Positions 5,583 through 58,744 of a stretch of DNA of 64,000 bases are shown here, in pieces. Each line of letters opens with the position of its first letter. Within the stretch, counting starts at the first letter, position 1. A program made the translations under genes and the position numbers. Source of the DNA: Octopus bimaculoides (lineage: Eukaryota); contig NC_068981.1 in assembly GCF_001194135.2 (NCBI RefSeq), positions 65,187,795-65,251,794 on the forward strand, written 5' to 3'. The notes under the pieces were generated by a model. It was given only the letters and a program-made list of their open reading frames with translations, had not been told where the DNA came from and searched no databases.

Positions 5583-8500
5583 CATTTAACGTCTGTTTTC
5601 CATGCTGGCATGGTTTGGACAGTTTGACTGAAAATTGATCAGCTTGGTAGCTGCCCCAGGATCCAATTTGATTTGGCATAGTTTCTACACCCACTCCAAC
5701 CCACTCACAGATAGCCATCTCTGATAGCTGTGAGCAAGAATGTAGTCAGGGAACATCTTTACTGCAAAAATCAGACACATCCACTCAATATTTCGTCAGC
5801 CTTGACTACAGAAAATAATTTTATATACCAAGTTATATTTTGCCAAAGAGTGTCATGTATGTAACAATTTTTTTGTTGATATACGTCAAGTTTATTGAGG
5901 CAACATGACTTGCAGAAAATATCAATTTTATTTTTTGGTAGATGTTTAACATCATTACTGAAAATAACTATAAAATTTCACAGTTAAAGGGTTAAATAAA
6001 ATAACGTGGTTCTGGTTTCCCTTCACATAGGAAAAGACAAGGTCTTGTTATTTACTAGAACATGTGTTTTGATGCATAGAATTGGTAATATTACTTCAGA
6101 CTTTTGATAGATAGGGCTACTTAATCAGCTCTGACTTGAAGTTAAGCAACAATAACAAAAACTTGATGTACCACTGTTTTTCCCCCTTGTATTTTCTATC
6201 ATTTCAATAAACTATAAAAGTTGTACTCACTTTCCACTCTAACTCATTCAATGCAGTAGCCCTTTGCTTCCTTTCACTGTCCTTGTTGTATTTTAGTCTT
6301 ACTGAATCCTGATCTTACACCCTTCCTTCCAAGAACTGCAATTCTCAGGTATTCTCTTTCCAAGCATATTTTTCATGTGGGCATTAACTTACAGACGTTC
6401 AATCAAAACATCAACGACATCAAACTTCACAACCATAGGAAGCTTGCTCACTCTTTTCATTAACTTATAAAAGAGATAGCAGTTCTGTTACCTCTTTTGC
6501 TTAGTGCCCATAACCAACAAATACTTAACTCTCAAATGGCTCAGTCTACTTAGCTTTAAATAAGTACCACCAGGTAAGACTCACTTAGTAGAGTAAGCAA
6601 TCGCAATGCTATAAAGTTAGTATATGCTTCATTAGCATAAGCACTTTTGGTTTCTTATTTGTGTGTGTGTGTAATAAAAGAAGTTAATGGAGTGCCATAG
6701 CAGTGTGCTGTGAATTGAAAAGGTTGAAAATACCGTTAATGAAATACAAAGCAGATAGTTTCATGCTATTTCATACATTTTATTTTATATTTCCCAGAAT
6801 GCAAGTTCAGCTTTTCCTCTGAGGTCTTCAAGAGGAGTATATCGAAGTTTCAAGGAATTCAAGTGGCTTCGCAGAACTCTTCGTTGGGAGTATCTTACCT
6901 CGTATGCAAAACATTTAAATTGTTCTTTTTGTCTGGAGTTTTTAATGTATGTTGAAGAAATAGCTTTTGTTCTTGTGATTGTTGTTAAAGATGTTGTTGT
7001 TACTGGTGTTCTTGAAGTTTAACTCCAGATCAACCTTAATCAAATAAAACTATAACCAAAGACATTCCATTTATAGCCATCCCATCTTTTTAGGTTAATA
7101 TATAACTATATTACTCTTACTCTTTTACTCTTTTACTTGTTTCAGTCATTTGACTGTGGCCATGCTGGAGCACCGCCTTTAGTTGAGCAAATTGACCCCA
7201 GGTCTTATTCTTTGTAAGCCTAGTACTTATTCTATTGGTCACTTTTGCCGAACTGCTAAGTTACAGGGACGCAAACACACCACTATCAGTTGTCAAGCGA
7301 TGTTGGGGGGACAAACAGACGCACAAACATATACACATGCACACACACATATATATATATATATACATATATACGACGGGCTTCTTTCAGTTTCCGCCTA
7401 CCAAATCCACTCACAAGGCTTTGGTCAGCCCGAGGCTATAGTAGAAGTCACTTGCCCAAGGTGCCACACAGGGGAAATGAACCTGGAACCATGTGGTTGG
7501 TAAGCAAGCTACTTACCACACAGCCACTCCTGTCTAATGTGTCATTTCTTTATTTAAAATAGTATGGTGTGATATGTGGAGAATTTGACTCCTATTTCTA
7601 ACAAACCAAATGACCACGAAGAGGCTACTTCTTTGACTTATAATTAGAGATTTTAAAAGTATGTGCATGTGTTAGGGTGCATGTATTTCCATGTTCTTGC
7701 ATGTGTGTGCATATAAACGTATGTTTTACAGCTGTGATTGTGGTTGTTACAGTCAAAATATACCTAAACGTGTATGTGTGTGATTTGCTGTTATTGTTGT
7801 TGTTGTTTTTTAAAGGTTGCAAGCTGGCAGAATTGTTAGCATGCTGGACAAAGCGCTTAGTGACATTTCACCCATCTTTACATTCTGAGTTCAAATTCCA
7901 CCATGGTCAATTTTGCCTTTCATTCTTTCAAGCTCAATGAAATAAGTGCCAACTGAATATTGGGGCTGATGTAATTGACTAACCCCCTTCCCTCATAAAT
8001 TGCAGCCCATGTGCCTATTGTAGAAAGGATTGCTGTTGTTTAGTCCCAGATCAACCCTGAATGAAAAGACCAATCAATGATAATAATGTTGAGATATTTG
8101 TATAAGGTCAATGTTATATTTGTTGTTGTTTTTATTGTTGTTTAGTTCTTGAGACAGAATTGAAAGAGCAGAACTATGATTAAGGATCCTCCAGCCATGA
8201 CTATCCCAGTCTTGTTTTAGTCATTTGTATGATAGTATACCTAGAACTACATTATCCAGTTCTTATCAGCTGGTGTTCACTCAGCAGACTGGGTACAGAT
8301 GTGGCTGTGTGGTTAAGAAGTTTGCTTCACAGCCACAAGGTCATAGGTTCAATCCCAATACAAAGCATCATAAAGGAAAAAGCTCCTTCCTGAGTCATAG
8401 GAGCTGTGTTCACAGATTCTCCGACATGAATACTCCCTACTGAACAGAATAGCAGTCCATCACAGGAGTACTCGTTTTTGTCTACTGAGTGGACAAAAAG

Positions 8501-9455: not shown

Positions 9456-12400
9456 NNNNNNNNNNNNNNNNNNNNNNNNNNNNNNNNNNNNNNNNNNNNN
9501 NNNNNNNNNNNNNNNNNNNNNNNNNNNNNNNNNNNNNNNNNNNNNNNNNNNNNNNNNNNNNNNNNNNNNNNNNNNNNNNNNNNNNNNNNNNNNNNNNNNN
9601 NNNNNNNNNNNNNNNNNNNNNNNNNNNNNNNNNNNNNNNNNNNNNNNNNNNNNNNNNNNNNNNNNNNNNNNNNNNNNNNNNNNNNNNNNNNNNNNNNNNN
9701 NNNNNNNNNNNNNNNNNNNNNNNNNNNNNNNNNNNNNNNNNNNNTATCGTCAGAAATGATTGCAGTATTTGTGGTGGTGGCATCAGCAGTGGTTGACGGT
9801 AGTGATGGTAGTGAGGGAGATAAGGTGAAAATAAGAAAGGTAGAAGAAAGGGAAATGGAGAGAGAGGAAAAAAATAAGAGAGGAAGTGCATGTGCATTTA
9901 GAAGTACAGTATACAGTTACAACTATATGAAACATCTCATTTAACAGCAATGTCATTCTCGGTTTAAACTTGTTGTTATTTACCCTAAATACTCGAGTAA
10001 TAGTCAATCTCATGTAAAAGTTGAACCCCTACTATTTCACGAACAACAGAACAACATTAGTGTAATGTTATTGAAGAATTATGATGTGAAACATGCCCAG
10101 TAGGTACCGGCTGTATGCATCGTGTTACAGTAGGTAGTGGTATGCCAGTACAGGGTAGATATATTACCGGTGATAATAGAGCATAATTATGAGATATAAA
10201 TTGATTTCATACAGCTAGTCTGTTAAGTTTGATGGATACAAATAAGAGAGAAAGTGTAAATATTTATAAGAGCTACACGGTCTTATTTATGGGTTTTGTT
10301 ATTTACTAAGACATGTGTTTTGATACATAGAATTGGCAATATTACTGTAATTCATTGTATTTTTGTTTTATTCGCTTAGAGACCAGATGGGCTTCTGCTG
10401 CTAATATGGTATTTCAGATTCTAACTTGAATTTCAGCCCCTCAGAAGTAGTATCCATATAATAATCAACCCCATAAAATTGACCTTAAAAAAATAGACTA
10501 AAAAATTCGACCTTTACATGAGTATATATGGTATCTTTTTATTTTATTATGCTTATTTTGTTTATTTGATATTTGTTTATTTCAGCAATATCCCTGTCCT
10601 TCCATCAAACTACTGGTTCAAAAGAAATTACAATCCAAGTGTTGTTGCTTCCAGACTGGTTCCACTAAAAAACTTCCTAAATGAGTAGGTTTAATGTAGT
10701 TTTTTTTCCCTTTGGTCTATATTGTAAAACTTTTAAGACTATTGGCTAAATGTGTTATATCATTTATTGATTGAGAGTGTCACATAGCTATCATACTATT
10801 TTTATATAAAGAGTAAAGATCCCCTTCAGAAATGAATGACCATGGAATTGCACCTTTGTGGCACAAGTGTAGACAAGGTTGCTTTATGGAAGACCAGCAG
10901 TCACCCATGCATACCAGCCTTCTCCATGCCACTGATGTTATCCAAGGGAAAGGCAAAGGCCAATACAGCTTGGCATCAGTGATATCGCAACTCATTTCTA
11001 CAGCTGAATGAACTGGAGCAACATGAAATAAAGTATTTTGCTCAAGAACACAACACACAGCCTGGTTTGGGAATCGAACTCATTACCTCATGATTGTGAG
11101 CTCGATGCTCTAAACACTGAGCCATGTGCCTTCACATTTTTATATAACTATCACATTATTGGTTATTAATGTTGTTATTTAACCCCAAGTCAACCCTGAT
11201 TAAGCAGATCTAGAATCAAAGATGTTTCAGCACCTACCATTCTAGCTTTTGCACATCTAGGGCTATATATTCCTTTTCTTTTTTTTTATACAGTAGGCTT
11301 TGAATTGAAATTGCTTTGGCTATAGATCAAGTAATCACACACAAGTTCCTTTGATGATTGTCATACTTTTCTCTCTCATCATGTGCCAGAGGCATTAGCA
11401 ATCATGGAGTTCCAAACCAAAGACTTAAAAGTCATGGTTTTCCTTTGGAAAAATACAGCAGTAGTTTCTCATTGCTTTCTTCTTGTTTATTTACAATTTA
11501 CTCCACAAGTTTCCTACTCACCTGAGATTATTCTTGAAGCACATGATCTATTGAACTCTTAGGCAGGGCAACTGGTTCACATGACCTAAGTCCATGTCTG
11601 CACACTTGTAGGTCTGTTTGGTACTTGTCTAGGTACCAGCTCTCCTCTGGATCCTGTATCCCTTAGCTACATGACCATCTTCTACTATTTGACCCATAAT
11701 CAGGGTGTTCTTGACTAGTATTACCACCCTGATCCAGAGCTGGCCAAAATTTTTGTTTTGTAAAATTTATTGAATAGATTTTTGTTGTCACAGACTACAA
11801 CTACTTATCTTTAAATTTATTGTTTTATTTTATTGTACTAACTAAAATCTATAAATACTAAGTTCAAGTATTGATAGAAAAAACAGAAATGAAACTGTAT
11901 TTGCAAAAATTGGCTTGAAAATACTTTGCAATTCAGTAGGATGTTGTTTATATCTTTACAGATGTATCAAAGACAAGAAAATAGTATCTGATGTGGCATT
12001 TCATTTGTTTGTCCAGTCCGATCTAACAATTCAAGATATCACCAGACAACGAAAGGGTCAAACTCATCATTCATATCTACCATGTCTTTGGAATTGTGGA
12101 GGAAAAATCCATAAAGATGAGTAAGTAGGATTTTAGATTCTTAATGCTAATTAAAAGTTCAGACTTGATTCTGTTGAAGACTTCAGGTATACGAAATTTC
12201 AGTCCAATTTTCATCTTTATTCAGTTTTTTCTTCTTTTTTTTTAGCCTGAGGTGTAGGATTGGGTAGTTGCTTGGGTAAATTAAGATGACGTGAAAATGG
12301 AATTTGAAATAAGTTACTAAAAAATGTTATAAAAGATGTCAAAACTAAAATTGATAACTGAGCTCACATTAAGATAACTATTTCAATTTAATTCAATTTA

Positions 12401-21420: not shown

Positions 21421-21719
21421 TTAAGTTTTTACAACATCAGGTTCTGGCAGGTATGAATTGTCGTTTTCTTCTGTAGCTGGATCAACAAGTAATGTTGGAG
21501 TAATCAACTTGTCAGGTGTTGTTAATTTTCGACAAATTCTGATGTTTTCTAGTATGTCAGGAATAGTCCAAAACTTCCGAAGCAGAGCATGTTCTAAGGT
21601 AAAATAACCATTGCGAATGCAACGTATTTGGGTGCATATGGCACCAGATTTCAACTGTAAGCCAATATTATGTATTAGTGACATCAAATATGTTGTTTTT
21701 TCATTCAGGGTATGAATTT
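21421..21719 (-). CDS. TRUB2: TRUB2 last coding exon
   Basis: Acceptor tctatttcag at 21720+; EIHTLNEKTTYLMSLIHNIGLQLKSG...VVKT*; TAA at 21421-21423. Confidence 0.95.
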
Positions 21720-23539
21720 CTGAAATAGAAATACAAAAAGCTGGTTAAAGAATTCTTTTGATTGGAAGAAAAAGAATTGTTGTTGTTATTGTTGGAAGCC
21801 AAAACAACTAGTTGGCAGAACTGTTAGTATGTCAGACAACATGCTAAGCAACACTTCTTCCATCTTTATGTTCTGAGTTCAAATCCTGCCAAGATTAGTT
21901 TGCCTTTCATATTTTCAGAGTTGATGAGATTGAAATAGGTACCACTGAGCATTGGAGTTAATGTAATCAACTAGCCCCCTCTCCCAAATTTCAGGTCTTG
22001 TGCCTAAAATAGAAAGGGTTATTGTTGGAAGCCTCTCAAGTCTATGAAGAAATCAGTATGCAATTGCATGATCTACTAGAAATAGCAGTGAAATCTCCCT
22101 CAAATTTCACTCTATGGTCTTAAAAAGGAATAAGTATTCAGTAGAACTCAGTCTTGCATATGATATGCCAGAAAGGAGAGGGGAGAATCGTGGTTATAAT
22201 ATACCAAAGGCCAAGACAAACTTTCAAATGTCCAACTAGTTATAAATAAATACCACCACGTAAAATACACCATTTTGAGCGTGGCCATCGCCAGTACCAC
22301 CTGACTGGCCCTCGTGCCGGTGGCACGTAAAAGCACCCACTACACTCTCGGAGTGGTTGGCGTTAGGAAGGACATCCAGCTGTAGAAACTCTGCCAAATC
22401 AGATTGGAGCCTGGTGTCGCCTCCTAGTCCACCAGTTCTCAGTCAAATCGTCCAACCCATGCTAGCATGGAAAGCGGACGTTAAACGACAATGATGATGA
22501 TGATGATAAAACAACATATCTTGTCAGCTGCATTAATACTGTTAAATTACTGAGTGTTTCATTAGCTTACAAATCTGAGTTCAACTCCTGCAGGAATAGG
22601 TAGTAGAGAAACAGGATGTGCTAAGCTGACTTGCTTTGCCGTAGCAATATTTATATATAAAGATGAAATTCTTATGAATTACCTTTAAAACCCAGTTGGT
22701 AATGGCATTCACCATCAACGTGTGGAGTCAACAGTTGCAACTGCTTGAAGAATTGATAGCTAAAATCTTGGTGTTGGACTATATCCTTTGCAAAGAGAAC
22801 TCTAAATAGTGAAGTGCACGAGTTTAAATCTTTACAAAGAGATAGTGTAATTTATCATAAAAGTAGATGATTTGTTGAATGCCTGAATATCTGAGTCATC
22901 ATCATCATTATCATTTATGCTGGCATGGTAGGACATGTTTAAGAGGAGATGGCAAGGCAAAAGACTGCACTGAGCTCCACTGTCTACTTTAGCATGGTTT
23001 CTACAGTTGGATGCCAACCACTTTGCAGAGCATGCTGGGTGCTTTTCACCCAGCACCAGCAAGATCACCTAGTAACTCACAAGGCAAGACCACTCAAGTG
23101 AGGGAAAAGTAGTATTGAGGGAAATGGATTTTGCCAGGTAATGTGAGCTATGACAAAGAGACAGAAACAGATGTCTCATTGTGGAGGAGATATATAAAGC
23201 TACCCATGTAGTGATGCCTGAAGAAATGGTATTAAAGCAGTAAGTTATCGATAAAAAGAAATAAAGATTTTATCTAATTCTCATACAATATACATGTATA
23301 TATATATATATACACACACACATAATATCTCATTGTGGAGGAGATATATAAAGCTACCCATGTAGTGATGCCTGAAGAAATGGTATTAAAGCAGTAAGTT
23401 ATCGATAAAAAGAAATNNNNNNNNNNNNNNNNNNNNNNNNNNNNNNNNNNNNNNNNNNNNNNNNNNNNNNNNNNNNNNNNNNNNNNNNNNNNNNNNNNNN
23501 NNNNNNNNNNNNNNNNNNNNNNNNNNNNNNNNNNNNNNN

Positions 23540-23580
<41 letters not shown>

Positions 23581-26500
23581 TAATAATAACAAGGGATTGG
23601 CAAAACACCTCACTAGGTACTGAAAATAGACGCCAAATGGCACTAAAACCACCTTAAAAACTCTAAGAACACAGGTTGTAGTCAAGCAAAAGAAGGATAA
23701 TAAATTAAACTTTTGGTTAATTGCATATAAGATCTCATTTCAAGCTAAAGGTAAAAAAATATACCTACTGCTATCATCAGCGTTGATGATAAAGGTATTT
23801 TTTACCTTTAGTTTGAAATGAGATCTTATACGCGATTAACCAAAAGTTTAATTTATTATCTTTCTTTTGCTTGACTATAACCTGTGTTCTTAGAGTTTTT
23901 AAGGTGGTTTTAGCGCCATTTGTCATCTTTTTTCAGCGCGTGGTGAAGCGTTTTGCCAATCTCTGTTATAATTATGTATATAATTATTAATATAATATTT
24001 GGAAAATTTACCTATAAGGTTTTTTTATTTTCATGCTAACCTGATAAAATCATAAATGGTTTTATCCTTTGTTACATAATTTATGTGTGTGTGTGTGTGT
24101 GTGTGTATATGGAACATATGACTTACCTAAAGTGAAATCTGGAGGTTGGAAATCAATACATTTGATTCCATAAAGAATTGTAGGAGTATATTCTTGTGTT
24201 GGTCGCACTAATCCTTTCGATGCTAGCTCATAAGCTTCTTGGCTCTGTAAATCTACTTTTGCATATCTGGAATTAGTAAGAAAGATAACAGGTTTGATTA
24301 ACAAATATGACTATTTCACTTGGCCTTCTAAGATATTTGAGTATGGCTTGAAATGACAACTTTCACTAAACTAATCCTGACCCACCTGAACAGAGATCAA
24401 TAGCAAAAAAAAAAAAAAATTTATCATTTTATATTGAAAGCATGTTCTCAGCCAACCTCTGAAAATAAACAAAAATTAAAAGTTTCATGGAAAAATAGGT
24501 GTTAAATTAACAATATCCGTTTTGTGACAATTCAAATCAATGAGAGTGCCTCTATATAACTACTCAGCTTATAAAGAATAAGTCAAATTTCTTTCAATTT
24601 CAATCCTACTATCATAAAAAAAAAAAAAAATGGCTGGTCACAGCCGGAATGCCTTTGATTACAGGTCATTACAGTTAGGATTGACACAGGACTAAAATGT
24701 CTATCTTTTTTGTAAGTTTTGGTTACAAAAATTCGGTTTGCATGCCAGAAAATACAGCATTTTTAACTATAATATACTGTATCAGGTGACATAAGTACAG
24801 GGAATTTAATCTGGGAAGCTATCATTTCTGCTACTCCTCTCTCCAGACATTCTCTCAAAAACAATGGGAAAATACCAGTGAGTTTCGGGTTTTAGATGAT
24901 TTTAAGACATGACTTCAAAATCTATTATACTAAAGTATTTGTGTTGCATAGTCAAGGCAAATTAATTGGATTGACTCGGTTTCTATAGTGGGAAAATATG
25001 TTCCATTTGTACCTCACAGCTAAGTAGCAATGAGAAAGTGTAACAAATACGGAGAATAAATGCACAAGCAATGCCAAAAACAAAAAGCATCTGAGAGATA
25101 AAATTAAAATGGAAAAATGGATGGCAAATAGGAAACTTACATAAACATCTGCCTCTGATGTTGAGCTTGAGCTGCAGCACAAACTTTGTCCAACATTGAC
25201 CTCTTTATATGATCTGAAACAAAAATATATGTACATGTGTATTTCTCTTTCTCTCTCTCTACCACACATATACATACACACACATATAGATATCATCATC
25301 GTCGTCGTCATCGTTAGCTTTCCATGCTGGCATAGGTTGGACGGCTTGACTGAGGACTGGCAAACCAGAAGGCTGCACAAGGCTCCAATCTGATCTGGTA
25401 AAGTTTCTACAGCTGGCAGGTAGGTAGGTAGGTAGGTAGGTGGATTGAGTGATATAGATGTGTATGTGGATCATCTTGACAAAGAGTAACTTACGTTGCA
25501 ACGTGCAGAGTTCCATGTCTAGCTCATACATTCTAATGTTTGCTTGGTTTCTATATCTGGATGTACTTCTTATGATGAACCACTTTACAAAGTATACCGA
25601 GTGCATTTTATCATGCTATTGGCATTAGAAGTTGTCCCATGGGAGAAGACTACAGAATCCCTTCTATTCTGTATTAATTTGGATTTGGCCAACAGCCAAG
25701 AAATGCAAAAATAAAAATATGAACTCCACCAGCTGTAAAGTGAGGGTGAGCTTTCTAATGATACAAAATTATACACGCAAATTTGATTCTTGTAGGTGGA
25801 GATTTAACTCATGTGTTACACTATCTTTGTTACAATTAATTCTGAAGAATTTGGTAAAATAACTTTGTTACTAAAACTGAAATTTTGATGAAGAGTTTTA
25901 ATTTAGATCATTTTAAAACAGGAAGTTTGTTTCAAAGAATTAGTGCTAGCCTTGGAAAGTTTGGCATCAAAATTTCCTTGAGTGCCTGGAAGTCTTCTCT
26001 GTTGCAAACATTTACAGTCTCTGCTCTGAGGATAACTTGATGTACTGTTCCTTACTGTAGCAACCCATGTCCCAAGGTATCTTCTTCTATCCAGGCCTTT
26101 AGACCCCTGCAAAAGGGTTACAGGTGGTGTCCCTTTCTCCTCTGACTAAGTCATAAAAAATACAAAAAAATATATATTTTGCCTGGCTAGCGACAAATAA
26201 CAGTGAAAACTCCCTAAAAATAATCCCTGTCATCTTAAAAAGGACATGTACTGGAGTTCCTTCCAAACAGGTAAAAAGTCAGAATGATCATAGCTGAAAT
26301 GCTTTGGATTAAATGCCTGCCCTATCAGGACTGACCTGGGGCTAAACGGCAAAACCATCTTCTACATGAGTTAACATTCAATCCAGTAAAAAGCTAGATC
26401 AGCCTTGTATTATTAGGTCAGATACAAAGCTTAATTTCTGACCCAAGGTCCTCTGAAGGATATGAAATGTTTTTGTTTTTTGTCATTTCAGTATGTAAAA

Positions 26501-26745
26501 TAAAAAACAAATAAGAAAAATAAAAGGGAAACTGATACATACGATAAGAGATTTTCTGAAGAAGGCGTCCACGTGTTGAAAAGTCTTCAGTGACCTTCCC
26601 AAACTGGCCTTTGACATGATATACCTAAATATATATAAAAAGAAAAATACAATAATAGGATAAACTCTTATATAAGAATTTATCATGTAGTTATCGTGAA
26701 AAAAATTCATAGGGAAGAATTTATCGTTTTTCCCTAAATCATATT

Positions 26746-26778
<33 letters not shown>

Positions 26779-29700
26779 NNNNNNNNNNNNNNNNNNNNNN
26801 NNNNNNNNNNNNNNNNNNNNNNNNNNNNNNNNNNNNNNNNNNNNNNNNNNNNNNNNNNNNNNNNNNNNNNNNNNNNNNNNNNNNNNNNNNNNNNNNNNNN
26901 NNNNNNNNNNNNNNNNNNNNNNNNNNNNNNNNNNNNNNNNNNNNNNNNNNNNNNNNNNNNNNNNNNNNNNNNNNNNNNNNNNNNNNNNNNNNNNNNNNNN
27001 NNNNNNNNNNNNNNNNNNNNATATATATATATATATATATATAAATAAAAAAAAATACATAAATACATACACAGATTTATACCAGCTTGAGTCAAAAGTT
27101 TTTTTCAGATTTACAATGATGATTTTTAGCAACTTGTCTCTCCATGTTATATTATTAATTTGATTAAAATTGAAATGAAGGACAACATTTGCATGATGGT
27201 GGTACTTGTTTATAATGGTGCAAGTATGGCTATAATGGCACAGGTGTGGCTACAGGTTAAGAAGCTTGCTTGCCAACGATGTGGTCTTGAGTTCAGTTTC
27301 ACTGAGTTGTGCCAAGGGCAATAGTCTTCTACTATAGCCCCAGGCGAACCAAAGCCTTGTAAGTGGATTTGGGCTACAGAAACTGAAACAAGTTCATCGT
27401 ATTTGTGAGTTTATGTGTATGCTTGTCTAGACATCATGTAATGATTGTAAATGAACACCAGCATCATATAAGTGAGGTTTATTCATTTCTAGTCATCATC
27501 ATCGTCATTTAACGTCTGCTTTCCATGCTTGCATGGGTTGGGTGTTTGACTGAAGGTTGGCAAGCTTGAAGGCTGCACCAGCTCCAATCTGATCTGGCAA
27601 AGTTTCTACAGCTGGGTGCCCTTCCTAACGACAACCACTCTGAGAGCGTAATGGGTGCTTTTATCTGCCACCAGCATGAGGGCCAGTCAGGTGGTACTGG
27701 TATTGACCACGCTCAAATGGTGCTTTTTACATGCCACCTGCACAGGAGTCAGTCCAGCGGCACTGGCAACAACCACGCTTGAATGGTGTTTTTTATGTAC
27801 CACCGGTACAAAAGCCAGTCAGGCAACACTGGCAATGATCACGCTTGAATGGTACTTTTTAAGTGCTACTGGCATGGGAGCCAGTCAGAAGCCCTGACAA
27901 CAATCACACTCGAATGGTGCTTTTTAAGTGTTACTGGCATGGGAACCAGTCAGCGGCCCTGGCAACGCTCATGCTCTATGTTCGAAATTTACTTACTTGT
28001 CTGTAAAATACTGACCAATAGTTCACTTGTCAAATTTGATAATCTTAGACAGATAAAAGATTAGTGCAAGGGGTTTTCTTTATAGTAAGAAAGATTTACA
28101 TGCATGCATATCAGACTCACTCTTTCATTCTTACACAATACATTCTTATACTGCAAACTTCAGGCAAGTTCTCATGTGAAGATTGCAGTTGCATGAAACT
28201 CAATTGAGGAGATAAAAATTCAGCTGCAACAAACCAATAACACGTATTGAGTACTCCTCTCTCATTCAGTCAACATAATTCAACATGTTTGTCTGTGTGT
28301 TCATTGAAAGGGAAAAAGTGTACTCTTACTATTCAAAGTTTTAAACTGCTTTTCAGTCTAGTTGTTTTAGTGGAGATTCTATACTACACTGTATTGTACA
28401 ATAAGATATATTATACTTACACGTAGAAATTGACAGCTCTTTAAGACATTAATTGTGTTAATGCCTTTCTGAATTCCTATAACTGGAAAGAGGAAAAAAT
28501 TAAATTGTAATATATGTTAACATAGAAAAACAACTAGTTTGTTATGTCCAGAGGATGTAGCTAGCAAAGTGAAAGTTAGTAATAAGTTCAGTGAGGAATC
28601 TAGCATGCAGTTAGCATCCAGCAAGGCTTGGTTCTCAGTCTCCTTTACTCTATTATTGTCCACCAGGCCAGGAGATAGATGCTTAAGACTGACTACCCAC
28701 AGTAAGTCCTGTGTGCCAATATCCTAGTTCTTACAGCCGAATCTGGTGAAGTAGCTTTTTAAAAATTCCAAATTCAGGCATGGGTGAGGCTATGTAGTAA
28801 GAAGTTTGCTTCTTAACCACAGGATTCCGAGTTCAGTCTTACTGACCTTGAGCAAATGTTTTCTGCTATAACCTCAGGCTAATCAAAGCATTGTGTGTAG
28901 ATTTAGTAAATGGAAACTGAAAGAAGCCCATTGTATATATACATACATATATGTATCGATGTGTTTCTTTGAGTCTGTGTTTGTCTTCCACCACTGTTTG
29001 ACAACCAGTTTTGGTGTGTTCATGTAACTGTAACTTAACAGTTCGGCAAAAGAGACTGACAGAATAAGTACCAGGCTTAAAAAATAAGTACTGGGGCCAA
29101 TTCACTCAACTAAAAATTCTTCAAGGCAGTGCTCCAGCATGGCTGCAGTCTAATGACTGAAACAAGTAAAAGAATAAAAGATAACAGATCCGGAAGCAAA
29201 AGCTTGAATTAAAAGACCATAAAGTAATCTTAGCAAAGACCAAAGTTTTAGCAGGAACCAGTCACTGGTCATGCTCTGAATGCAAACAAGGAATAGGTAG
29301 AAATTCTATACGATGTACCCAGTGTGAACAATGGATAGAAAAAGGGTTTAGTGCAAACATAGGCAGATCGACATGGAAAGTTGACATCTTATGTGGAAAG
29401 ACACAGGAATAGTGTGTGAGATAAATTCTTTCAAATGCTTGAAAGGCTAAGTAGAAGTAGTGGACGGTTTGAACTAATTAACAATGAAGATGGGGTTTCG
29501 AATTCATGACAACAAGAGAAAGAACAGAGTAGAAAAAGTTGAGGAAGTTGTTATCTCTCTCAGCGAATGGTAGATTCTATGATGCTTGTTTACAAAGCAC
29601 AATGATATTACAGAGGATAGCAGGCTTGATCCTTGACTGTAGATCTGTGAAGACAGGAAGGAAATGAAACAAAGCATGCTCCACTGGATGTGTAACGTTA

Positions 29701-32700
29701 GTGTAAATCAAAAATGGAACACAAACAAGTTGAACAAAAGAACTAAATATAAGCGCAGGCATGGCTGTGTGGTAAGAAGCTTGTTTCCCAACCACATGGT
29801 TCCAGGTTCAGTCTCACTGCATGGCACCTTGGTCAAGTGTCTTCTACTGTAGCCTCTGGCCAACCAAAGTCTTGTGAGTGGATTTGGTAGACGGAAACTG
29901 AAAGAGGCCCATTGTATATATGTATATATTTATGTGTGTGTTTTTGTGTCTATGTTTGTCACTCCACCCCATCGCTTGACAACCAATGTTGCCATATTTA
30001 CATACCTGTAACTTAGTGTTTCAGCAAAAGAGATTGATAGAATAAATACTAGGCTTACAAAGAATAAGTCCTAAGGTTGATTTTTTTTTTTTACTAAAAA
30101 CCCTTTAAGGTGGTACTCCAGCATGTCCACAGTCAAATGACTGAAACAAGTAAAAGAATGAAAGAATAAGAGGAATTGGTCGTAGTATGCAGGAGAGAAA
30201 GACTGTGCCAGGAAGGACATATTACACTTAAAGAAGACATCGGTTGTATAAAGAGCTGAGCATACAAGCAGACAGAACCTGCATGAGAGATAAACTAAGG
30301 AACATATGGGAAGGAGTGGTGAAGTCTAATCTCAAGACACTAAACCTCACAAAGGAGATGTTAAAAAAATCACAACAAATGGCAAAATACTGAGCTATAG
30401 AAGACCTTCTATATTTTTTTCTATCAGCTGCTTGTTCTAGCTCTCTTCCTACCCAGTAAAGTGGGAAAGAAAGGGATGAATGAACAGAGACAACACAAGG
30501 AAAAGTGAACTCTCTTTGGTCTTGCCAAAGACAAGATAGCTCTCTGATGTAGGTGAACTAGCAAACGGAGGCTATGTTGGAGAGAGTGTACCTATCAGAC
30601 TCAGAGTTACATGTGAAGAGGTTCGACCTCTTCTCCACACCAAAACAAAATTTAAAAAACAAAACTGGTATGTGATCTTGGTGACATTTCATTTTGTATT
30701 CCCTCTATTCAACTCTGTATACCCACCTAGAAGAACTGTGACTCCTCTGCTGTTCAGAAGATAGCCAGTTAGAAAGATAAATCACTCAGAATAAACCCGT
30801 TATACTGTGAAGAGAAAGTATTGTAATATTTGCAGAAGAGAGACACGGCTCAGAGTTCTACATATAAAGGCAGCCTTTCCAGAACAGCATCTCTGAAGCA
30901 AAACTGAGAAGACATTTTGTCTTATTAGAGATCTTTGATGTCAGTGCTGCAATAAATATATCTTATCCATCCTGTTAATGGTTGATGATAGAAAAGGTAG
31001 AGTCAATTAATTATGCAGCACACTAGATCAGTTTGAAAGTTAAAATTAAAAATAAAAAAAAATAAAAATAAATCAGAAAATAGATATTTTAATTTACCTG
31101 TTACTCCTGAAGAATATCTTCCCAAACCATTACAGTATTTTAAAGGTATATCTGATTTGATGTATCTTGGACCCAAAACTGAAAATAAATTTATACATGT
31201 ATCATTAAAATCTCATCACTATGCCACTTAACAAGCAGTGAAAGGACAGTATTAAGTTCCTGGCAAACGATTTGTAAAGTAAGTATGATTCCTGGTTGAG
31301 TCATTTCATTTCTCTTGCAATTCATGATTGTGATTTGTGGACGGTAAACCCTTTAGCATTTAAATCAGCCAAAGCAACATCCGAACGTGGTCAATGCCAG
31401 GTGTGCCTGACTGGCTCTCGAGCTGGTGACACATAAAAAGCACCAACCGAATGTGGCCAATTCCAGTACCCCCAGACTGGCTCCCGTGCAGGTGGCACGC
31501 AAAAAGCACCATCCGAACATGACCAATACCAGGTCAGCCTGACTGACTCCCATGCCAGTGGCATAAAAGCACCAACCGAACGTGGCCAATGCCAGTAACC
31601 CCAGACTGGCTCCCATGCCAGTGGCACGTAAAAAGCACCATCTGAACGTAATCGTTGCCAGGCCTACCTGACTGGCTCCTGTGCCGGCAGCACATAAAAA
31701 GCACTCACTACACTCTCAGAGTGGTTGATGTTAGGAAGGGCATCCAGCTGTAGAAACATTGCCAGATCAGATTGGAGCCTGGTGCAGCTGCTGGTTCTCC
31801 AGACCGCAGTCAAAACTGTCCAACCCATGCCAGCATGGAAAACGGACGTTAAGCGATGATGATGATGATGATGATATCTAACCTTAGTATTCTACTTGTT
31901 TTATGTTCAAATTAGCTATATCCAGCCTCTCACACCTACCCTGTTATTATGAAAATAAACAATCACATCTGTGAAATCTCAAAACCACAAGATAATACAT
32001 GATTTATTTAAAACAATATGAAAAAATAAGCATTACATTTGACAGAGTAATTTGAAACTCAAGGGTTAATAATCAGGCGATATATGGACTCTGCCAGGTT
32101 AATTTGACTAAATTCATAAAGCTTTTAGAAGTGAACAGATCATTGGTAACAGATTAGAAGGTTTGCTAAAGCATTTGACACAATACCATCAGTATTTGTT
32201 CTGGTTCTTTACATGCTGAGTTCACATCCTACTGAGGTTAACTTTGGGTGAATCCTTTGGATCAATGGCCAAGTGGGATTTGGGGTTCAAGAAAATAAAG
32301 TACCAGCCTTGAATGACAGTTTGGCAGAATTGTTACAAGTGTTCACAAAATGTTTTGGGAGATTTATTTCAGCCCTTTACATATCTGAAGTGAAGCCAAC
32401 AAGACGGTGATTATCTGTAAAAAATAACTGCAACGGAAAATCATCCTTGTATTCTCCCATGGCAAATTAACAGAGTCAACTCCCTGTACTCTGAGTTCAA
32501 ATCCTGCTAAAGTCAACTTTGTCTTTCATTCTTTCAATGTCAATACAAAAGTTCCACCAGCCCAAGGTGGTAGATTGGTAAAAAAAAAAACAGGTATATG
32601 GTTATATCATATACCTGTCTTCCATCATATATGTAGTCAATCAGGAATGACCTGAGATTAAACAACAACAACAACAACCAAAACTAGACTGAGGTATTGC

Positions 32701-33597
32701 ATTACCAATACAACTGAAGTAGACTAACTGGTTACAGCTCCCAAAACTAAACCCAGGTTGAAGACATAGATCACCTTAACTTGATATTTTTCCCTATAGT
32801 AGTTAGGACAGCTATAAGATAATTTTCTTTTCTTTTAAACATAAATTTTAAAAAATATAAACAAATATTTAACATGATGACTTACCAAGTCTGTGATCTG
32901 TGAGATCAGTCAGACCAACAGGTTCTGTTCCAGTAGCTGGTAAAGTGGATCCAGTTTCAAAAGAAATTTCTTGCTTTTTCATCTCATGCTTATAACAAGG
33001 TAATTCATTTAGAGCTGAAAAGTGGAGAAAAATAACACATATATAATGCATTCACATATACACACGACATATATATATATATATACATACCTGAGTAAGC
33101 ACATAAATGTGAAACAAGGTGGGAAAAAAATAGTACTCAAATACTGGAGGCAAAGTAATATGCTTTATTGTTAATGCTGCAAAAACATCACAAAAACATC
33201 ACAAAAGACTGCAACTCAGAGCTTCATGTTCCCATTCATTGGGCAGTTGTGATCAAGAATGGAATCTTGATTACAACAGCCTAATGAACAGGAACAGGAA
33301 ATTCTGAGTAGCAGTTTTTTGTGATATCTTTGTTTTTGCAGCTTTAATAATAAAGTATACACACACACACACACACATATCCAAAACACAAACCATATGT
33401 ATACATATACTCAGTGAAATGATGAAATATTTTTTCAAATTCAGATTTAAGAAATGAAAAAAGAAACATCACTCACCGTTAGAAATATTAAATTTGAGGG
33501 TATCAAATAATCTCTGCATTGAAACATCTTCAGGTTTATAAATACAGAATACTCCATGAAGTCTTCGGTATACAGAAGGTGACCAGTCTAACTTCAT
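21421..33597 (-). CDS. TRUB2: Mitochondrial TruB-family pseudouridine synthase 2 homolog; complement(join(33477-33597,32886-33014,31098-31178,28421-28482,26543-26624,25141-25213,24127-24266,21421-21719)); 987 nt, 328 aa
   Basis: Eight GT-AG exons with consistent phases give an uninterrupted ORF matching human TRUB2 along its length by eye (RLHGVFCIYKP; LGPRY; SSGVTVIGI; YHVKGQFGKVTEDFSTRG; DLQSQEAYELASKGLVRP; GIKCIDFQPPDFTLE; LIHNIGLQLKSGAICTQIRCIRNGYFTLEHALLR). Confidence 0.95.
23580..23977. repeat. ~400-bp foldback palindrome (two ~195-bp arms, 4-nt loop)
   Basis: Centre TATCATCA-GCGT-TGATGATA at 23772-23791; arms roughly 85-90% identical by eye. Confidence 0.9.
24127..24266 (-). CDS. TRUB2: TRUB2 coding exon 7
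   Basis: ttccag|ATATGCA...TTAG|gtaagt; YAKVDLQSQEAYELASKGLVRPTQEYTPTILYGIKCIDFQPPDFTL. Confidence 0.95.
25141..25213 (-). CDS. TRUB2: TRUB2 coding exon 6
   Basis: tttgtttcag|ATCATA...TTTAT|gtaagt; HIKRSMLDKVCAAAQAQHQRQMF. Confidence 0.92.
26543..26624 (-). CDS. TRUB2: TRUB2 coding exon 5
   Basis: atttag|GTATAT...TATC|gtatgt; VYHVKGQFGKVTEDFSTRGRLLQKISY. Confidence 0.93.
28421..28482 (-). CDS. TRUB2: TRUB2 coding exon 4
   Basis: ctctttccag|TTATAG...CTACGT|gtaagt; IGIQKGINTINVLKSCQFLR. Confidence 0.9.
29190..30400 (+). mobile_element. Decayed RTE LINE ORF2 3' part interrupted by a SINE A copy (29755-30170)
   Basis: GRNSIRCTQCEQW..., then RTE-like C-terminal remnants after the SINE. Confidence 0.55.
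31098..31178 (-). CDS. TRUB2: TRUB2 coding exon 3 (motif II region)
   Basis: attttcag|TTTTGG...AACAG|gtaaat; LGPRYIKSDIPLKYCNGLGRYSSGVT. Confidence 0.92.
31372..31874 (+). mobile_element. RTE 3'UTR fragment with ~5 tandem ~60-65 bp units and (GAT)n tail, inserted in MITE D (other copies 22260-22506, 27490-27990 -, 60955-61335 -)
   Basis: Units of the type gactggctcccgtgccggtggcacgtaaaaagcacc; shared 3' core cactacactctcggagtggttggcgttaggaagggcatccagctgtagaaac. Confidence 0.85.
32886..33014 (-). CDS. TRUB2: TRUB2 coding exon 2
   Basis: cttttcag|CTCTAA...CTTG|gtaagt; LNELPCYKHEMKKQEISFETGSTLPATGTEPVGLTDLTDHRL. Confidence 0.9.
33109..33355. mobile_element. Foldback element with two head-to-head decayed hammerhead motifs
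   Basis: Same family as 13537-13735; motifs at 33208-33247 (-) and 33275-33316 (+); central hairpin GTTGTGATCAAGA/TCTTGATTACAAC. Confidence 0.65.
33477..33597 (-). CDS. TRUB2: TRUB2 first coding exon
   Basis: ATG at 33597; MKLDWSPSVYRRLHGVFCIYKPEDVSMQRLFDTLKFNISN; donor gtgagt; acceptor ttttgcag 8 nt upstream of the ATG implies an upstream exon. Confidence 0.9.
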
Positions 33598-38029: not shown

Positions 38030-38260
38030 CCGGAAAGGAGATACGTGACTTTGCTAGCCAGCCATGCCTGGCAATTACAAGACGAAGAGATTCCATACTC
38101 GATCGCATGGAAAATACTCGAGAACCCAGGCAACTACATAAAGGGACGAAACGGTGCAAGTTATGCATTGCCGAACGTACAAGGATCCTTAAAGATTCGC
38201 TCGTACCAGGGACTATCCTGAACTCTAGGACGGAGATTTTAGAAAATTTCTGCTAACCTT
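38030..38260 (+). mobile_element. Penelope-like GIY-YIG endonuclease C-terminal fragment
   Basis: Frameshifted LASHAWQLQDEEIPYSIAWKILE.../KGTKRCKLCIAERTRIL matches the PLE W..L...CxLC..E pattern. Confidence 0.8.
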
Positions 38261-38456
38261 TTGGAATCCGCATAGCGACACCACAACCGGAGACCAACAG
38301 CCAAGGCCGAAGGGAGTCGTTTACCTTCGTGGTGCTTTGGTGACTGCAAGGTGGCAGCGCAGCCGATGATCGATGGACAATGGCGAAGGGAGAAATCACC
38401 TCGGGTTTTACTCTTAAAAAACGAGGTTTTTTTCCCCCACCCACATTTTAAGGAGT

Positions 38457-38529: not shown

Positions 38530-40589
38530 CGGCCTACCCCACTATTATATATATATATATATATATATATCATTTGCATTTACATCTCTCTCGGAGCCTA
38601 TTAGTTATATGTGATTTATTCTTTCTGTTTCGCTTTCAAACGCCCGTCTAGTATACACTATCCGTTGTGAAAAGTTGCATGCTTATAAATTCATCTGAAA
38701 TATATTCGCTGAAGCAAATTTTCTTGATAATAACTCCTTTCTGGTAGTGTCATCAGAGACCATAAGAGTAGGATTCAGCCGTTATGTTGGTCTGGGGCCC
38801 AGGGAGTTAAGGGGGACTCAGGGATCCAAGAATAGGCACTGGAAATTTCTGGTTTGTAGGAGGACTAAAGCCCCACTACCAGCAGGTGGTGCTCAAAAGC
38901 AATCTCGTTTCGCCTTGAAAAATTTATCCCAGACTCACAAGATATAATATGATTTCTACTGATCAGATTACCTTTCATCTACCACAGATAAATCAAATAG
39001 TTTACAGTACTAAATTTTTAACTGTAAATGATTTTATGAAACACATTTGCTGCTAGCAATAGTTATATTTAGTATAAAACTGTCGGAGCTCTGAAACAGT
39101 TAACCTTCATGAAGTGATATAGGATCCAGGAGATATGGACCATTGTGCTGTATGTGAGTATATGGTAGAAGCACTTGTCATTAGGCTGTGGGCAACGACT
39201 TGATAAATAAATAGACGGTAGTAGATTGGTAAAGATTACCGTGTGGAGTGCGTCTAAAAGGGATGCATAGAGGAGACGACACTAAGAAATAAAGAACTAT
39301 GAACGAGAAAATGTTCAAAAGAGACAACTAGGATGAAATTGAATAACTTTGTTTTATAAAAAAACTTTCGTGTCTGTCTCATTGACAATTACGACTAAAA
39401 GATTGCAATGTTTGATTAGTGAATTAATTAAAGCTGTAACTAGTTTACAATCTTATTTTTATAAGTTTGTAACTGTTTATTATTTTCGACATTTTAAAAT
39501 TACCTCTCTAGAAATTTGCAATTCATCCGTACATGAAAACTTTATTTCCATTTATTTTCGCTTGTACAGCAGCAAAGTAGTTTTGGGGGAAACTTTGCAT
39601 GCGATTTGGAGTTATGAGCTTTTGAAGTGTTATGTATGTCGAGGGACAACCTGTTTAATTATCTCTAGTGTATCAGGNNNNNNNNNNAAATTTTAAAATA
39701 AATTGTTTTCAGCACTAAGCAACATTAAGCAAAATCTTCATTTTTTTTTTTTTTAACAACATAATCGTAATCTAAACCATCTAAAATGTATCACTGGAAA
39801 AAATTCCATTGAAAATTATAATACATTTCAAAGAAAGTTATGGGGAAACGTAGTTGGGTGGATGCACATTTCTGTAGTTAAACCCAATACAGAGCTCGGA
39901 AAAGAGTGAAGGAAAAGAAACGAAAATAAAGTAAGAAAAAGTTATCAATATGCAAGCAGATCAGAGTGAAACACAAAAGGACAAAAGCCATAAGGAAGAA
40001 AGGATGCATAGGCATGTCAGGAGTAGTGTTGGCAAATTTCTAGAAGCATTGAATATTTGAAGAATCTGTTTTTCTAGCAGCTAAAATAGCATTCATGTAT
40101 CTCAATATATGACTGTAGACCTCATACTTCTGACATGCTTTTACTTAACATATATAATGAACATTTTTGTCTACAGCTCTCCGGTGCAAACAAAATATAA
40201 GAGAAACTTTCATACGAGTCAAAACCTTATATTGTCAGTTACACGGGGAGTTAATTCCCTTATATGGTAGAAGTTATTTCCCTTTTATTTACAATTTAGT
40301 TTCACTGTTAGTTTGAGTGCAAAGGCACTGTGGACAGTAATTAATGCATTATATAAGTATCACATACATACATTGTTATGTATGTAAATTCAAATCTGTA
40401 AAAAATTTCTTCCCGATTTGTTTGATTTTTCGACTAAACTTTACAAAGGAGTAAAACGATTGATTTAACCAGAACTGCATCTGTAAACCAATTAACTAAA
40501 TACATTGAACACTTGTAAACAATTGTCATATTTGTACATTCTCACCTTGAAGAGAAAAATATCCCTCTTTTTCCCGCTTATCAAGTCTG

Positions 40590-57883: not shown

Positions 57884-58744
57884 CCTATCTGTCTATCTCT
57901 CTCTCTCTATATATATATTCATGAAAGTACTAGTTTCTTTTAATATGTATCATTCAAAGTGTACAGTATTGTATATATATCCATTATGGAGATATATATA
58001 TATATAAATGGAGTTAAATGCAGGTGCTATTCAAATTCTTTTACTTCCAACACATGTTTCGAAGGTATCACTGATATTATTCCAAAGGAATAAAATGGTN
58101 NNNNNNNNNNNNNNNNNNNNNNNNNNNNNNNNNNNNNNNNNNNNNNNNNNNNNNNNNNNNNNNNNNNNNNNNNNNNNNNNNNNNNNNNNNNNNNNNNNNN
58201 NNNNNNNNNNNNNNNNNNNNNNNNNNNNNNNNNNNNNNNNNNNNNNNNNNNNNNNNNNNNNNNNNNNNNNNNNNNNNNNNNNNNNNNNNNNNNNNNNNNN
58301 NNNNNNNNNNNNNNNNNNNNNNNNNNNNNNNNNNNNNNNNNNNNNNNNNNNNNNNNNNNNNNNNNNNNNNNNNNNNNNNNNNNNNNNNNNNNNNNNNNNN
58401 NNNNNNNNNNNNNNNNNNNNNNNNNNNNNNNNNNNNNNNNNNNNNNNNNNNNNNNNNNNNNNNNNNNNNNNNNNNNNNNNNNNNNNNNNNNNNNNNNNNN
58501 NNNNNNNNNNNNNNNNNNNNNNNNNNNNNNNNNNNNNNNNNNNNNNNNNNNNNNNNNNNNNNNNNNNNNNNNNNNNNNNNNNNNNNNNNNNNNNNNNNNN
58601 NNNNNNNNNNNNNNNNNNNNNNNNNNNNNNNNNNNNNNNNNNNNNNNNNNNNNNNNTGTTTATGACAAACTATGTTATTTTGCCAACCGAGTTTACAGAT
58701 AGAAGTACAAAGTACATAAGGAATTAGAGAATGAACAGAAGTTT

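What the first reader, a model, noticed from the sequence alone, without database searches (positions are those of the whole stretch)
31098..31178. TRUB2 lacks the catalytic aspartate: a probable pseudoenzyme
Motif II aligns without gaps as human GHRLDAQASGVLVLG versus this CNGLGRYSSGVTVIG. The Asp that all pseudouridine synthases need is Gly103 (codon GGA, plus-strand 31120-31122). That is two substitutions from an Asp codon, so it is unlikely to be a base-call error and cannot be repaired by A-to-I editing. The ORF is otherwise full length (328 aa) with intact splicing, which argues against a pseudogene. Established: TRUB2 belongs to the mitochondrial RNA-granule module with RPUSD3, RPUSD4, NGRN, FASTKD2 and RCC1L. 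Inference: here it acts as a non-catalytic RNA chaperone or mitoribosome assembly scaffold. The loss may be shared by other protostomes rather than cephalopod-specific.
Basis: partly seen in the sequence, partly recalled or inferred. Interest (0 to 1): 0.75.

Follow-up and report, generated by a model that had tools for sequence, protein, structure and literature searches.

The report
Octopus TRUB2 without its catalytic residues
The octopus copy of the mitochondrial RNA-modifying enzyme TRUB2 has lost the two residues that carry out its chemistry yet is still kept by natural selection, and the same loss recurs across most protostome animals, which points to a main job other than modifying RNA.

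Summary
The window is Octopus bimaculoides. On the minus strand, an 8-exon gene with canonical splice sites encodes the 328-aa RefSeq protein TRUB2. Residue 103, codon GGA at 31122-31120, aligns to the catalytic Asp of TRUB1 and bacterial TruB.

New findings:
1. The Asp's partner Arg (E. coli Arg181) is also lost; it is Met242 here.
2. Of 56 alignment columns at least 93% conserved in deuterostome TRUB2, the two most variable in protostomes are exactly this Asp and this Arg.
3. The loss is widespread in molluscs, arthropods, nemerteans, a priapulid and a tardigrade. Every deuterostome sampled keeps both residues.
4. The gene is under purifying selection in Asp-less cephalopods (omega 0.13-0.28).
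5. No alternative exon supplies an Asp.

Human TRUB2 was already proposed in 2025 to be inactive in cells and to act in mitoribosome assembly. The idea is therefore not new, but I found no report of this natural loss of the catalytic pair.

One caveat remains. Asp93, ten residues upstream, is nearly invariant in the Asp-less proteins. It also coexists with the intact pair in ascidians, so it is unlikely to be a replacement. I could not measure its distance to the active site.

The parts
38258..38273 (-). Coding part of an upstream 5' exon used by RefSeq isoform X1 (ATGCGGATTCCAAAAG|gt; adds MRIPK + first base of Glu)
   Evidence: Pattern match to the extra N-terminal MRIPKEEE of P0003, followed by a GT donor
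33477..33597 (-). Exon 1 of the 328-aa isoform (ATG at 33597; motif I HGVFCIYKP, Lys21 at 33537-33535)
   Evidence: donor ACG|gtgagt
32886..33014 (-). Exon 2 (TRUB2-specific insertion between motif I helix and motif II)
   Evidence: ttttcag| and TTG|gtaagt
31098..31178 (-). Exon 3, the motif II exon given in the finding (27 codons, phase 1/1; skipped in frame in O. sinensis isoform X2)
31120..31122 (-). Gly103 codon GGA at the position of the catalytic Asp (E. coli TruB Asp48)
31150..31152 (-). Asp93 codon GAT; Asp in 81 of 83 Asp-less TRUB2 sequences, variable in vertebrates, ambulacrarians and amphioxus
28421..28482 (-). Exon 4 (VIGIQKGINTINVLKSCQFLR)
26543..26624 (-). Exon 5 (VYHVKGQFGKVTEDF...; Tyr133 = E. 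coli Tyr76 at 26621-26619; Glu144 = E. coli Asp90 at 26588-26586)
25141..25213 (-). Exon 6
24127..24266 (-). Exon 7 (SQEAYELA motif)
21421..21719 (-). Exon 8 including stop TAA (TTYLMSLIH block)
21682..21684 (-). Met242 codon ATG at the position of the catalytic-network Arg (E. coli TruB Arg181, 'TYIR')

Best explanation
This is the orthologue of mitochondrial TRUB2 in Octopus bimaculoides. It keeps the TruB catalytic-domain fold but has lost the catalytic Asp (now Gly103) and its partner Arg (now Met242), and the second-shell Asp is Glu144. Shown here: the two core catalytic positions evolve almost freely in most protostomes, while the rest of the protein, including the active-site Tyr and the RNA-binding fold, stays under purifying selection. 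Inferred: the protein no longer makes pseudouridine and is kept for a non-catalytic role. That role is most likely binding mitochondrial RNA as a chaperone or assembly factor for the large mitoribosomal subunit within the RNA-granule module, as has been proposed for human TRUB2 together with MTERF3. On this reading the loss happened repeatedly, because the selected function of TRUB2 in bilaterians never depended on catalysis.
For: Gene model and Gly codon. Alignment of Gly103 and Met242 to the Asp and Arg of TRUB1 and TruB. Pfam TruB_N E = 6e-13. AF2 model pLDDT 89.5; best Foldseek match TRUB1 8jfx, E = 2e-17. In 125 TRUB2/TruB sequences, Arg is present in 36 of 42 with Asp but in only 10 of 82 without it. 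Of 56 columns at least 93% conserved in deuterostomes, the two with the highest entropy in protostomes are the Asp (3.14 bits) and the Arg (3.09 bits). An exhaustive HMMER sample repeats the pattern: 59 of 114 sequences are of the octopus type. Purifying selection: omega 0.28, 0.13 and 0.11-0.14 in three cephalopod pairs, p = 2.4e-5 for the closest pair. Exon structure is conserved in O. sinensis and Argonauta. Literature: in E. coli TruB, R181K lowers the catalytic rate 2500-fold and D90E 30-fold without loss of tRNA binding (PMC3973310). Human TRUB2 is essential, yet knock-down removes no pseudouridine, and a role in mt-LSU assembly with MTERF3 is proposed (PMC12716993). MTERF3 and TRUB2 coevolve (bioRxiv 10.1101/2021.09.14.460228).
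Against: No activity assay or pseudouridine map exists for any Asp-less TRUB2. Tyr133 (E. coli Tyr76) is 99% conserved in protostomes, so the pocket may still engage a base. Asp93 is 98% conserved in Asp-less proteins, and I could not measure its distance to the pocket because model coordinates are not exposed. Mitochondrial location and partners in octopus are assumed from orthology. The Asp/Arg association is not corrected for phylogeny. Recombinant human TRUB2 is active in vitro (PMC7749629), so the family is not uniformly dead.
Confidence: 0.78

Rival explanations
1. The enzyme is still active because another carboxylate, Asp93 in KSDIP ten residues upstream, has taken over the role of the lost catalytic Asp.
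For: Asp93 is Asp in 81 of 83 Asp-less TRUB2 sequences but variable in 30 vertebrate, ambulacrarian and amphioxus sequences. This is the inverse of the canonical column and is repeated in the exhaustive sample. The active-site Tyr is retained.
Against: Asp93 coexists with the canonical Asp and Arg in the ascidians Ciona, Phallusia and Styela, and with the canonical Asp in 6 of 8 protostome-like sequences that keep it. It therefore predates the loss and does not replace it. The partner Arg is lost together with the Asp. In the model, Asp93 lies before the strand that leads into the motif II loop and not in the loop itself. As far as I know, the catalytic Asp sits at a structurally equivalent position in every pseudouridine synthase family, with no known case of relocation.
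Confidence: 0.07
2. The Gly is an artefact of the gene model or assembly, and the real transcript uses another exon or an edited codon that supplies Asp.
For: Cephalopods edit RNA heavily. The window has N gaps. An intronic stretch at 30692-30781 reads TGYLLNSRGVTVLLGG, which resembles motif II.
Against: The same exon and the same Gly codon are present in O. sinensis and Argonauta, whose loci have no gaps. Two cephalopod-like transcript contigs carry Gly and Ser. tblastn and pattern scans of introns 2-3 in three species find no second motif II exon. The look-alike has Asn and not Asp, runs into a stop if spliced in phase, and is not conserved in the other octopods. The window's N gaps lie in introns 4 and 7. 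A-to-I editing of GGA gives GGG, which is still Gly.
Confidence: 0.02
3. The gene is a decaying pseudogene or a dispensable relic, and the lost residues are part of general degeneration.
For: Catalytic residues are lost. An in-frame isoform that skips exon 3 is annotated in O. sinensis.
Against: The ORF is intact, with canonical splice sites and conserved exon sizes over octopod divergence at dS of about 1. Omega is 0.13-0.28. About 40 other deuterostome-conserved columns remain at least 75% conserved in protostomes. Orthologues persist in about 200 clusters at 50% identity.
Confidence: 0.03
4. The protein is non-catalytic, but its retained function is not mitoribosome assembly. It could instead be an RNA-binding adaptor that recruits or regulates other enzymes, or a stabiliser of tRNA or mRNA.
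For: The fold and RNA-facing motifs are conserved. In E. coli TruB, substitutions of Arg181 and Asp90 cut catalysis without affecting tRNA binding (PMC3973310). T. brucei mt-LAF3 D211A complements loss of the protein (bioRxiv 10.1101/2023.02.23.529727).
Against: Nothing here separates these roles. The assembly role is preferred only because of the human data (PMC12716993).
Confidence: 0.1

Closest known systems
Human/vertebrate TRUB2 (mitochondrial RNA-granule pseudouridine synthase module)
   Same: It is the orthologue: named TRUB2 proteins from vertebrates match at E about 1e-50 to 1e-60 and 35-40% identity. Length is similar and there is no PUA domain. It shares the long insertion between motif I and motif II and the motifs H.LV.GP, SSGV, G.ATD and SQEAYELA.
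   Different: Vertebrate TRUB2 keeps Asp and, in most sequences sampled, Arg (two fish sequences have Cys at the Arg column), and recombinant human protein makes Psi55 in vitro (PMC7749629). The octopus protein has Gly103 and Met242. Vertebrates lack Asp93 and have two fewer residues before motif II.
RPUSD3 (RluA-family member of the same human module)
   Same: A pseudouridine-synthase fold that lacks the catalytic Asp (Gly at that position), is regarded as a pseudoenzyme, and is needed for mitochondrial translation (PMC12710931; bioRxiv 10.1101/2023.02.23.529727; PMC12716993).
   Different: It belongs to a different family (RluA, not TruB). In RPUSD3 the loss is the described state of the human protein, whereas in TRUB2 the loss varies by lineage and recurs.
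Bacterial TruB and human TRUB1
   Same: Same catalytic-domain fold (Foldseek E = 2e-17 to 1e-12; Pfam TruB_N). The active-site Tyr is retained.
   Different: These are active Psi55 synthases with the Asp48-Arg181-Asp90 network (PMC3973310), and bacterial TruB also has a PUA domain. The octopus protein has Gly, Met and Glu at those three positions, and no PUA-domain match was detected.
Trypanosoma brucei mt-LAF3
   Same: A mitochondrial pseudouridine-synthase-fold protein that acts as a ribosome assembly factor, with an essential function independent of the catalytic Asp (D211A complements; bioRxiv 10.1101/2023.02.23.529727).
   Different: It is in the RluA family, still has the Asp, and is evolutionarily unrelated to TRUB2 beyond the superfamily.

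Membership tests
TruB-family pseudouridine synthase fold | Match to the TruB_N domain above the curated threshold | tested here: met
   PF01509 E = 6.1e-13, 49.8 bits against a cut-off of 27.3, residues 104-234
TruB-family pseudouridine synthase fold | Three-dimensional similarity to solved TruB/TRUB1/Cbf5 catalytic domains | tested here: met
   AF2 model pLDDT 89.5, pTM 0.83. Foldseek: 8jfx E = 2.3e-17, TM 0.75 normalised to the target; bacterial TruB entries about 1e-12
TRUB2 orthologous group | Closest relatives are named TRUB2 and score above TRUB1/TruB | tested here: met
   Named TRUB2 from molluscs to mammals at E = 1e-223 to 1e-45, against TRUB1/TruB-like hits at 1e-19 or worse. With a deuterostome TRUB2 profile, protostome proteins score 1e-90 to 1e-50 and TRUB1-like ones at most about 1e-43
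TRUB2 orthologous group | No PUA domain; long insertion between motif I and motif II | tested here: met
   Only TruB_N was found by Pfam at E up to 1. The roughly 55-residue insertion aligns with other TRUB2 sequences
Catalytically competent pseudouridine synthase | Catalytic Asp in motif II (E. coli TruB Asp48) | tested here: not met
   Gly103, codon GGA
Catalytically competent pseudouridine synthase | Active-site Arg paired with the Asp (E. coli Arg181; R181K is 2500-fold slower, PMC3973310) | tested here: not met
   Met242 in TTYLMSL, aligned to YIRSL of TRUB1 and TruB
Catalytically competent pseudouridine synthase | Second-shell Asp (E. coli Asp90; D90E is 30-fold slower, PMC3973310) | tested here: not met
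   Glu144 in GKVTEDF. This column is Asp in 93% of deuterostomes but in only 55% of Asp-less sequences
Catalytically competent pseudouridine synthase | Conserved active-site Tyr (E. coli Tyr76) | tested here: met
   Tyr133; Tyr in 123 of 125 sequences
Catalytically competent pseudouridine synthase | Measured formation of pseudouridine | not testable with these tools
   Needs an enzyme assay or pseudouridine mapping
Pseudoenzyme (selectively maintained, catalytically dead homologue) | Catalytic residues lost while fold and other conserved positions are kept | tested here: met
   The Asp and Arg columns are the two most variable of the 56 deuterostome-conserved columns; about 40 of the others remain at least 75% conserved
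Pseudoenzyme (selectively maintained, catalytically dead homologue) | Purifying selection on the coding sequence after the loss | tested here: met
   Omega 0.28 (p = 2.4e-5), 0.13 and 0.11-0.14 in cephalopod pairs that all lack Asp
Mitochondrial RNA-granule / mt-LSU assembly module (TRUB2, RPUSD3, RPUSD4, NGRN, FASTKD2, RCC1L, MTERF3) | Mitochondrial location and physical association with module partners or 16S rRNA | not testable with these tools
   Assumed from orthology with human TRUB2 (PMC12716993; bioRxiv 10.1101/2021.09.14.460228)

The most novel reading that the evidence does not exclude
Asp93, nearly invariant in the Asp-less TRUB2 proteins, is a functional carboxylate that reaches the active site, so that protostome TRUB2 remains a pseudouridine synthase with a relocated catalytic residue. 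To my knowledge this would be the first such case in the superfamily.
Probability: 0.07. Interest if true: 0.85.

Novelty: new variant of a known kind. Interest (0 to 1): 0.6.

Why it matters
TRUB2 is essential in human cells. Whether that essential role needs catalysis is an open and recently debated question: recombinant human TRUB2 was active in vitro in 2021, but no target was found in cells in 2025. The comparative data here act like a natural mutagenesis experiment. Most protostome lineages sampled have replaced the catalytic Asp and its partner Arg with almost any residue, yet the protein stays under purifying selection. If that holds up, the conserved function of TRUB2 in bilaterians is non-catalytic, and the residues retained in deuterostomes serve a secondary activity. 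It also gives simple reagents for testing this: natural Asp-less orthologues for complementation of human TRUB2 depletion. Finally, it flags one unexplained, strongly conserved residue (Asp93) for structural work.

Tried and rejected
1. A first homologue search with four joined exon peptides gave only two fragments. The full spliced protein was needed.
All later comparisons use database sequences.
4. The motif-II-like intronic stretch at 30692-30781 (TGYLLNSRGVTVLLGG) was rejected as an exon. It has Asn and not Asp, stops after 15 codons in phase, has no DNA similarity to exon 3, and is absent from the O. sinensis and Argonauta loci.
5. The apparent 'HRLG' at the end of exon 2 comes from reading through the donor site.
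6. No DNA was on record for O. sinensis isoform X2 or for O. vulgaris.
7. PDB holds no TRUB2 structure.
8. Model coordinates are not exposed, so the distance from Asp93 to the pocket could not be measured.
9. No cnidarian or sponge TRUB2 could be identified by name, so the state outside Bilateria is unknown.
10. Rfam found nothing in the window.
11. Six literature searches found no statement that invertebrate TRUB2 lacks the Asp. The library does not cover subscription journals.
Full report
**1. What is at the coordinates**

The interval 31098-31178 is one exon on the minus strand. It begins after ttttcag and ends before gtaaat, and it reads (V)LGPRYIKSDIPLKYCNGLGRYSSGVT(V). I located the other exons with tblastn, using two retrieved fragments plus human TRUB2 recalled from memory purely as a guide. 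I then read each junction.

The gene has eight exons, all with AG/GT sites and matching phases:
- 33597-33477
- 33014-32886
- 31178-31098
- 28482-28421
- 26624-26543
- 25213-25141
- 24266-24127
- 21719-21421

They join into a 987-nt reading frame of 328 aa. Residue 103 is Gly, codon GGA at plus-strand 31122-31120.

**2. Identity of the gene**

The product is 100% identical to Octopus bimaculoides RefSeq proteins. Isoform X1 (336 aa) adds MRIPKEEE from an upstream exon at 38273-38258. The 328-aa isoform is named 'pseudouridylate synthase TRUB2, mitochondrial'.

Other evidence for the assignment:
- Pfam finds only TruB_N (E = 6e-13) and no PUA domain.
- Named TRUB2 proteins from molluscs to mammals are the best relatives, and TRUB1/TruB-like proteins score far lower.
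- An AlphaFold2 model built on 125 aligned sequences is confident (pLDDT 89.5, pTM 0.83).
- The model's best structural match is the catalytic domain of human TRUB1, 8jfx (E = 2e-17), followed by bacterial TruB and Cbf5/dyskerin.
- No TRUB2 structure is in PDB.

**3. Is Gly103 really at the catalytic position?**

HMMER pairwise alignments place G-L-G103 on T-L-D of TRUB1 (GGTLDS) and of T. maritima TruB (TLDP). They also place Met242 of TTYLMSL on the Arg of YIRSL. MAFFT alignments of 102 and 125 sequences agree.

The codon is GGA in O. sinensis and Argonauta hians. It is GGG in one unnamed cephalopod-like transcript and AGT (Ser) in another. It is therefore neither a sequencing error nor specific to one species. 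Editing of A to I would give GGG, which is still Gly.

**4. How far the loss extends**

In the first alignment the catalytic column reads G23, S20, D19, H6, N5, R4, P3, A3, E3 and others.

All deuterostomes sampled keep Asp: mammals, birds, reptiles, amphibians, fishes, amphioxus, hemichordates, echinoderms and ascidians.

Protostomes mostly do not:
- Molluscs have S, G, R, N, H, P, Q, C or A.
- Insects have G, S, P or H.
- Cladocerans and spiders have G.
- A priapulid has H, nemerteans N or S, a tardigrade V, and an annelid E.
- Nematodes have E.

A few protostomes keep Asp, namely Penaeus shrimps and the clam Ruditapes. Close relatives of these differ: the crab Portunus has His and the venerid Mercenaria has Asn. 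The residue must therefore have changed many times. I did not reconstruct this on a species tree.

**5. The loss is specific to the catalytic network**

In E. coli TruB the catalytic Asp48 works with Arg181 and the second-shell Asp90. R181K slows catalysis 2500-fold and D90E 30-fold, without loss of tRNA binding (PMC3973310). The octopus has Gly, Met and Glu at these three positions.

Across 125 sequences the Arg is present in 36 of 42 that have the Asp, but in only 10 of 82 that lack it.

As an unbiased test I took the 56 columns that are at least 93% conserved in 30 deuterostomes and ranked them by entropy in 91 protostome-type sequences. The top two are the Asp (3.14 bits) and the Arg (3.09 bits). 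About 40 of the others, including the active-site Tyr (99% Tyr), stay at least 75% conserved.

An independent, exhaustive HMMER search of 1.84 billion cluster representatives found 196 proteins at E <= 1e-30. Among the best 150, 114 cover all three key columns (positions 93, 103 and 242). Of these, 59 are of the octopus type and 18 of the deuterostome/TruB type. These counts are not corrected for shared ancestry.

**6. The gene is maintained by selection**

Exon sizes are identical in O. sinensis, and they differ by only one codon in each of two exons in Argonauta.

Pairwise dN/dS:
- O. bimaculoides vs O. sinensis: 0.28 (dS 0.12). There are 26 nonsynonymous and 25 synonymous differences where 78% nonsynonymous would be expected under neutrality (binomial p = 2.4e-5).
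- O. bimaculoides vs Argonauta: 0.13 (dS about 1.0).
- Between the two other cephalopod-like transcripts: 0.11-0.14.

All of these sequences lack the Asp. This rules out a decaying pseudogene.

**7.

(a) A different exon. tblastn with Asp-bearing motif II peptides and a pattern scan of introns 2 and 3 found only the known exon in O. bimaculoides, O. sinensis and Argonauta. The latter two loci have no gaps, and the window's gaps lie in introns 4 and 7. A motif-II-like intronic stretch at 30692-30781 has Asn, stops in phase, and is not conserved in the other two octopods.

(b) Another Asp. This turned up something unexpected. Asp93, the D of KSDIP, is Asp in 81 of 83 Asp-less TRUB2 sequences. 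It is variable in vertebrates, ambulacrarians and amphioxus. This is the pattern a relocated catalytic residue would produce.

Three observations argue against that reading:
- The ascidians Ciona, Phallusia and Styela carry Asp93 together with the canonical Asp and Arg.
- Six of the eight protostome-like sequences that keep the canonical Asp also have Asp93.
- The partner Arg is lost along with the canonical Asp.

Asp93 is therefore older than the loss and more likely serves a structural or partner-binding role. In the model it lies three residues before the short strand that leads into the motif II loop. I leave this rival at about 7%.

(c) Enzyme activity. This cannot be tested here.

**8. 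Comparison with what is known**

- RPUSD3, of the RluA family and the same human module, lacks its catalytic Asp and is regarded as a pseudoenzyme (PMC12710931).
- T. brucei mt-LAF3 works with its Asp mutated (bioRxiv 10.1101/2023.02.23.529727).
- For TRUB2 itself, recombinant human protein makes Psi55 in vitro (PMC7749629).
- A 2025 map found no TRUB2-dependent pseudouridine in human cells. It noted that TRUB2 is essential and proposed a shift to mitoribosome assembly with MTERF3 (PMC12716993).
- MTERF3 and TRUB2 coevolve (bioRxiv 10.1101/2021.09.14.460228).

The idea that TRUB2 acts without catalysis is therefore already published for human cells. Six full-text searches found no report that most protostome TRUB2 proteins have lost the Asp-Arg pair. 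The library omits most subscription journals, so I cannot claim it is unpublished.

**9. Verdict**

The gene is an ordinary, annotated TRUB2 orthologue with an unusual active site. I class it as a new variant of a known kind.

The most likely mechanism is a protein that binds RNA but does not catalyse, and that acts in mitochondrial ribosome biogenesis. That function is inferred from orthology and from the pattern of conservation; it was not shown here. The value of the finding lies in the comparative pattern, which bears on a current question about human TRUB2 and suggests direct complementation experiments.

Noticed in passing
L006 (O. sinensis) exon 3 at 6799-6879; window 31098-31178: RefSeq O. 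sinensis TRUB2 isoform X2 (P0004, 301 aa) is an exact in-frame skip of the 81-nt motif II exon, joining DHRL to VIGIQ. It would remove Asp93, the motif II loop and the start of the following strand. I could not check whether it is expressed in O. bimaculoides.
   Followed up: partly
window 31150-31152 (Asp93 codon): An Asp ten residues upstream of the catalytic column is 98% conserved in Asp-less TRUB2 and is present with the intact catalytic pair in ascidians. It is variable in vertebrates, ambulacrarians and amphioxus, which also have two fewer residues here. Its role is unknown.
   Followed up: partly
P0309, P0318, P0326 (nematode TRUB2 proteins): Bursaphelenchus, Panagrellus and Ancylostoma TRUB2 have Glu at the catalytic position and retain the partner Arg and Asp93. 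This is a third state that might keep weak activity.
   Followed up: no
P0147, P0149 (Osmerus, Oncorhynchus TRUB2): These fish keep the catalytic Asp but have Cys in place of the partner Arg (YLCK/YLCR), unlike the other vertebrates sampled.
   Followed up: no
window about 31371-31875 (intron 2, minus strand); similar pieces near 27500-27700, 25260-25400 and 22150-22340: A multi-copy interspersed repeat with internal repeats of about 60-70 nt. More than ten copies, in both orientations, occur in the 23-kb O. sinensis TRUB2 locus. Its translation gives spurious 'HGLD..G' motif hits. Rfam finds no tRNA or SINE family in the window.
   Followed up: partly
window 30692-30781 (minus strand, intron 3): A chance look-alike of motif II (TGYLLNSRGVTVLLGGYTELNRGN) preceded by a good branch point and polypyrimidine tract. 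It is not conserved in O. sinensis or Argonauta. If spliced, it would introduce a stop.
   Followed up: yes
window 4258-4734 (-) and 2942-3511 (+): Transposon remnants: a DDE_3 transposase fragment (Pfam E = 8.5e-11) and a weak endonuclease/exonuclease/phosphatase ORF (E = 7e-4, below the curated threshold) of the kind found in non-LTR retrotransposons.
   Followed up: partly
window 4968-5517, 9456-9744, 23417-23539, 26779-27020, 39678-39687, 58100-58656: Six assembly gaps (runs of N, 1771 bases in all), most of them flanked by (TA/TG)n-type simple repeats. Two lie in TRUB2 introns 7 and 4.
   Followed up: yes
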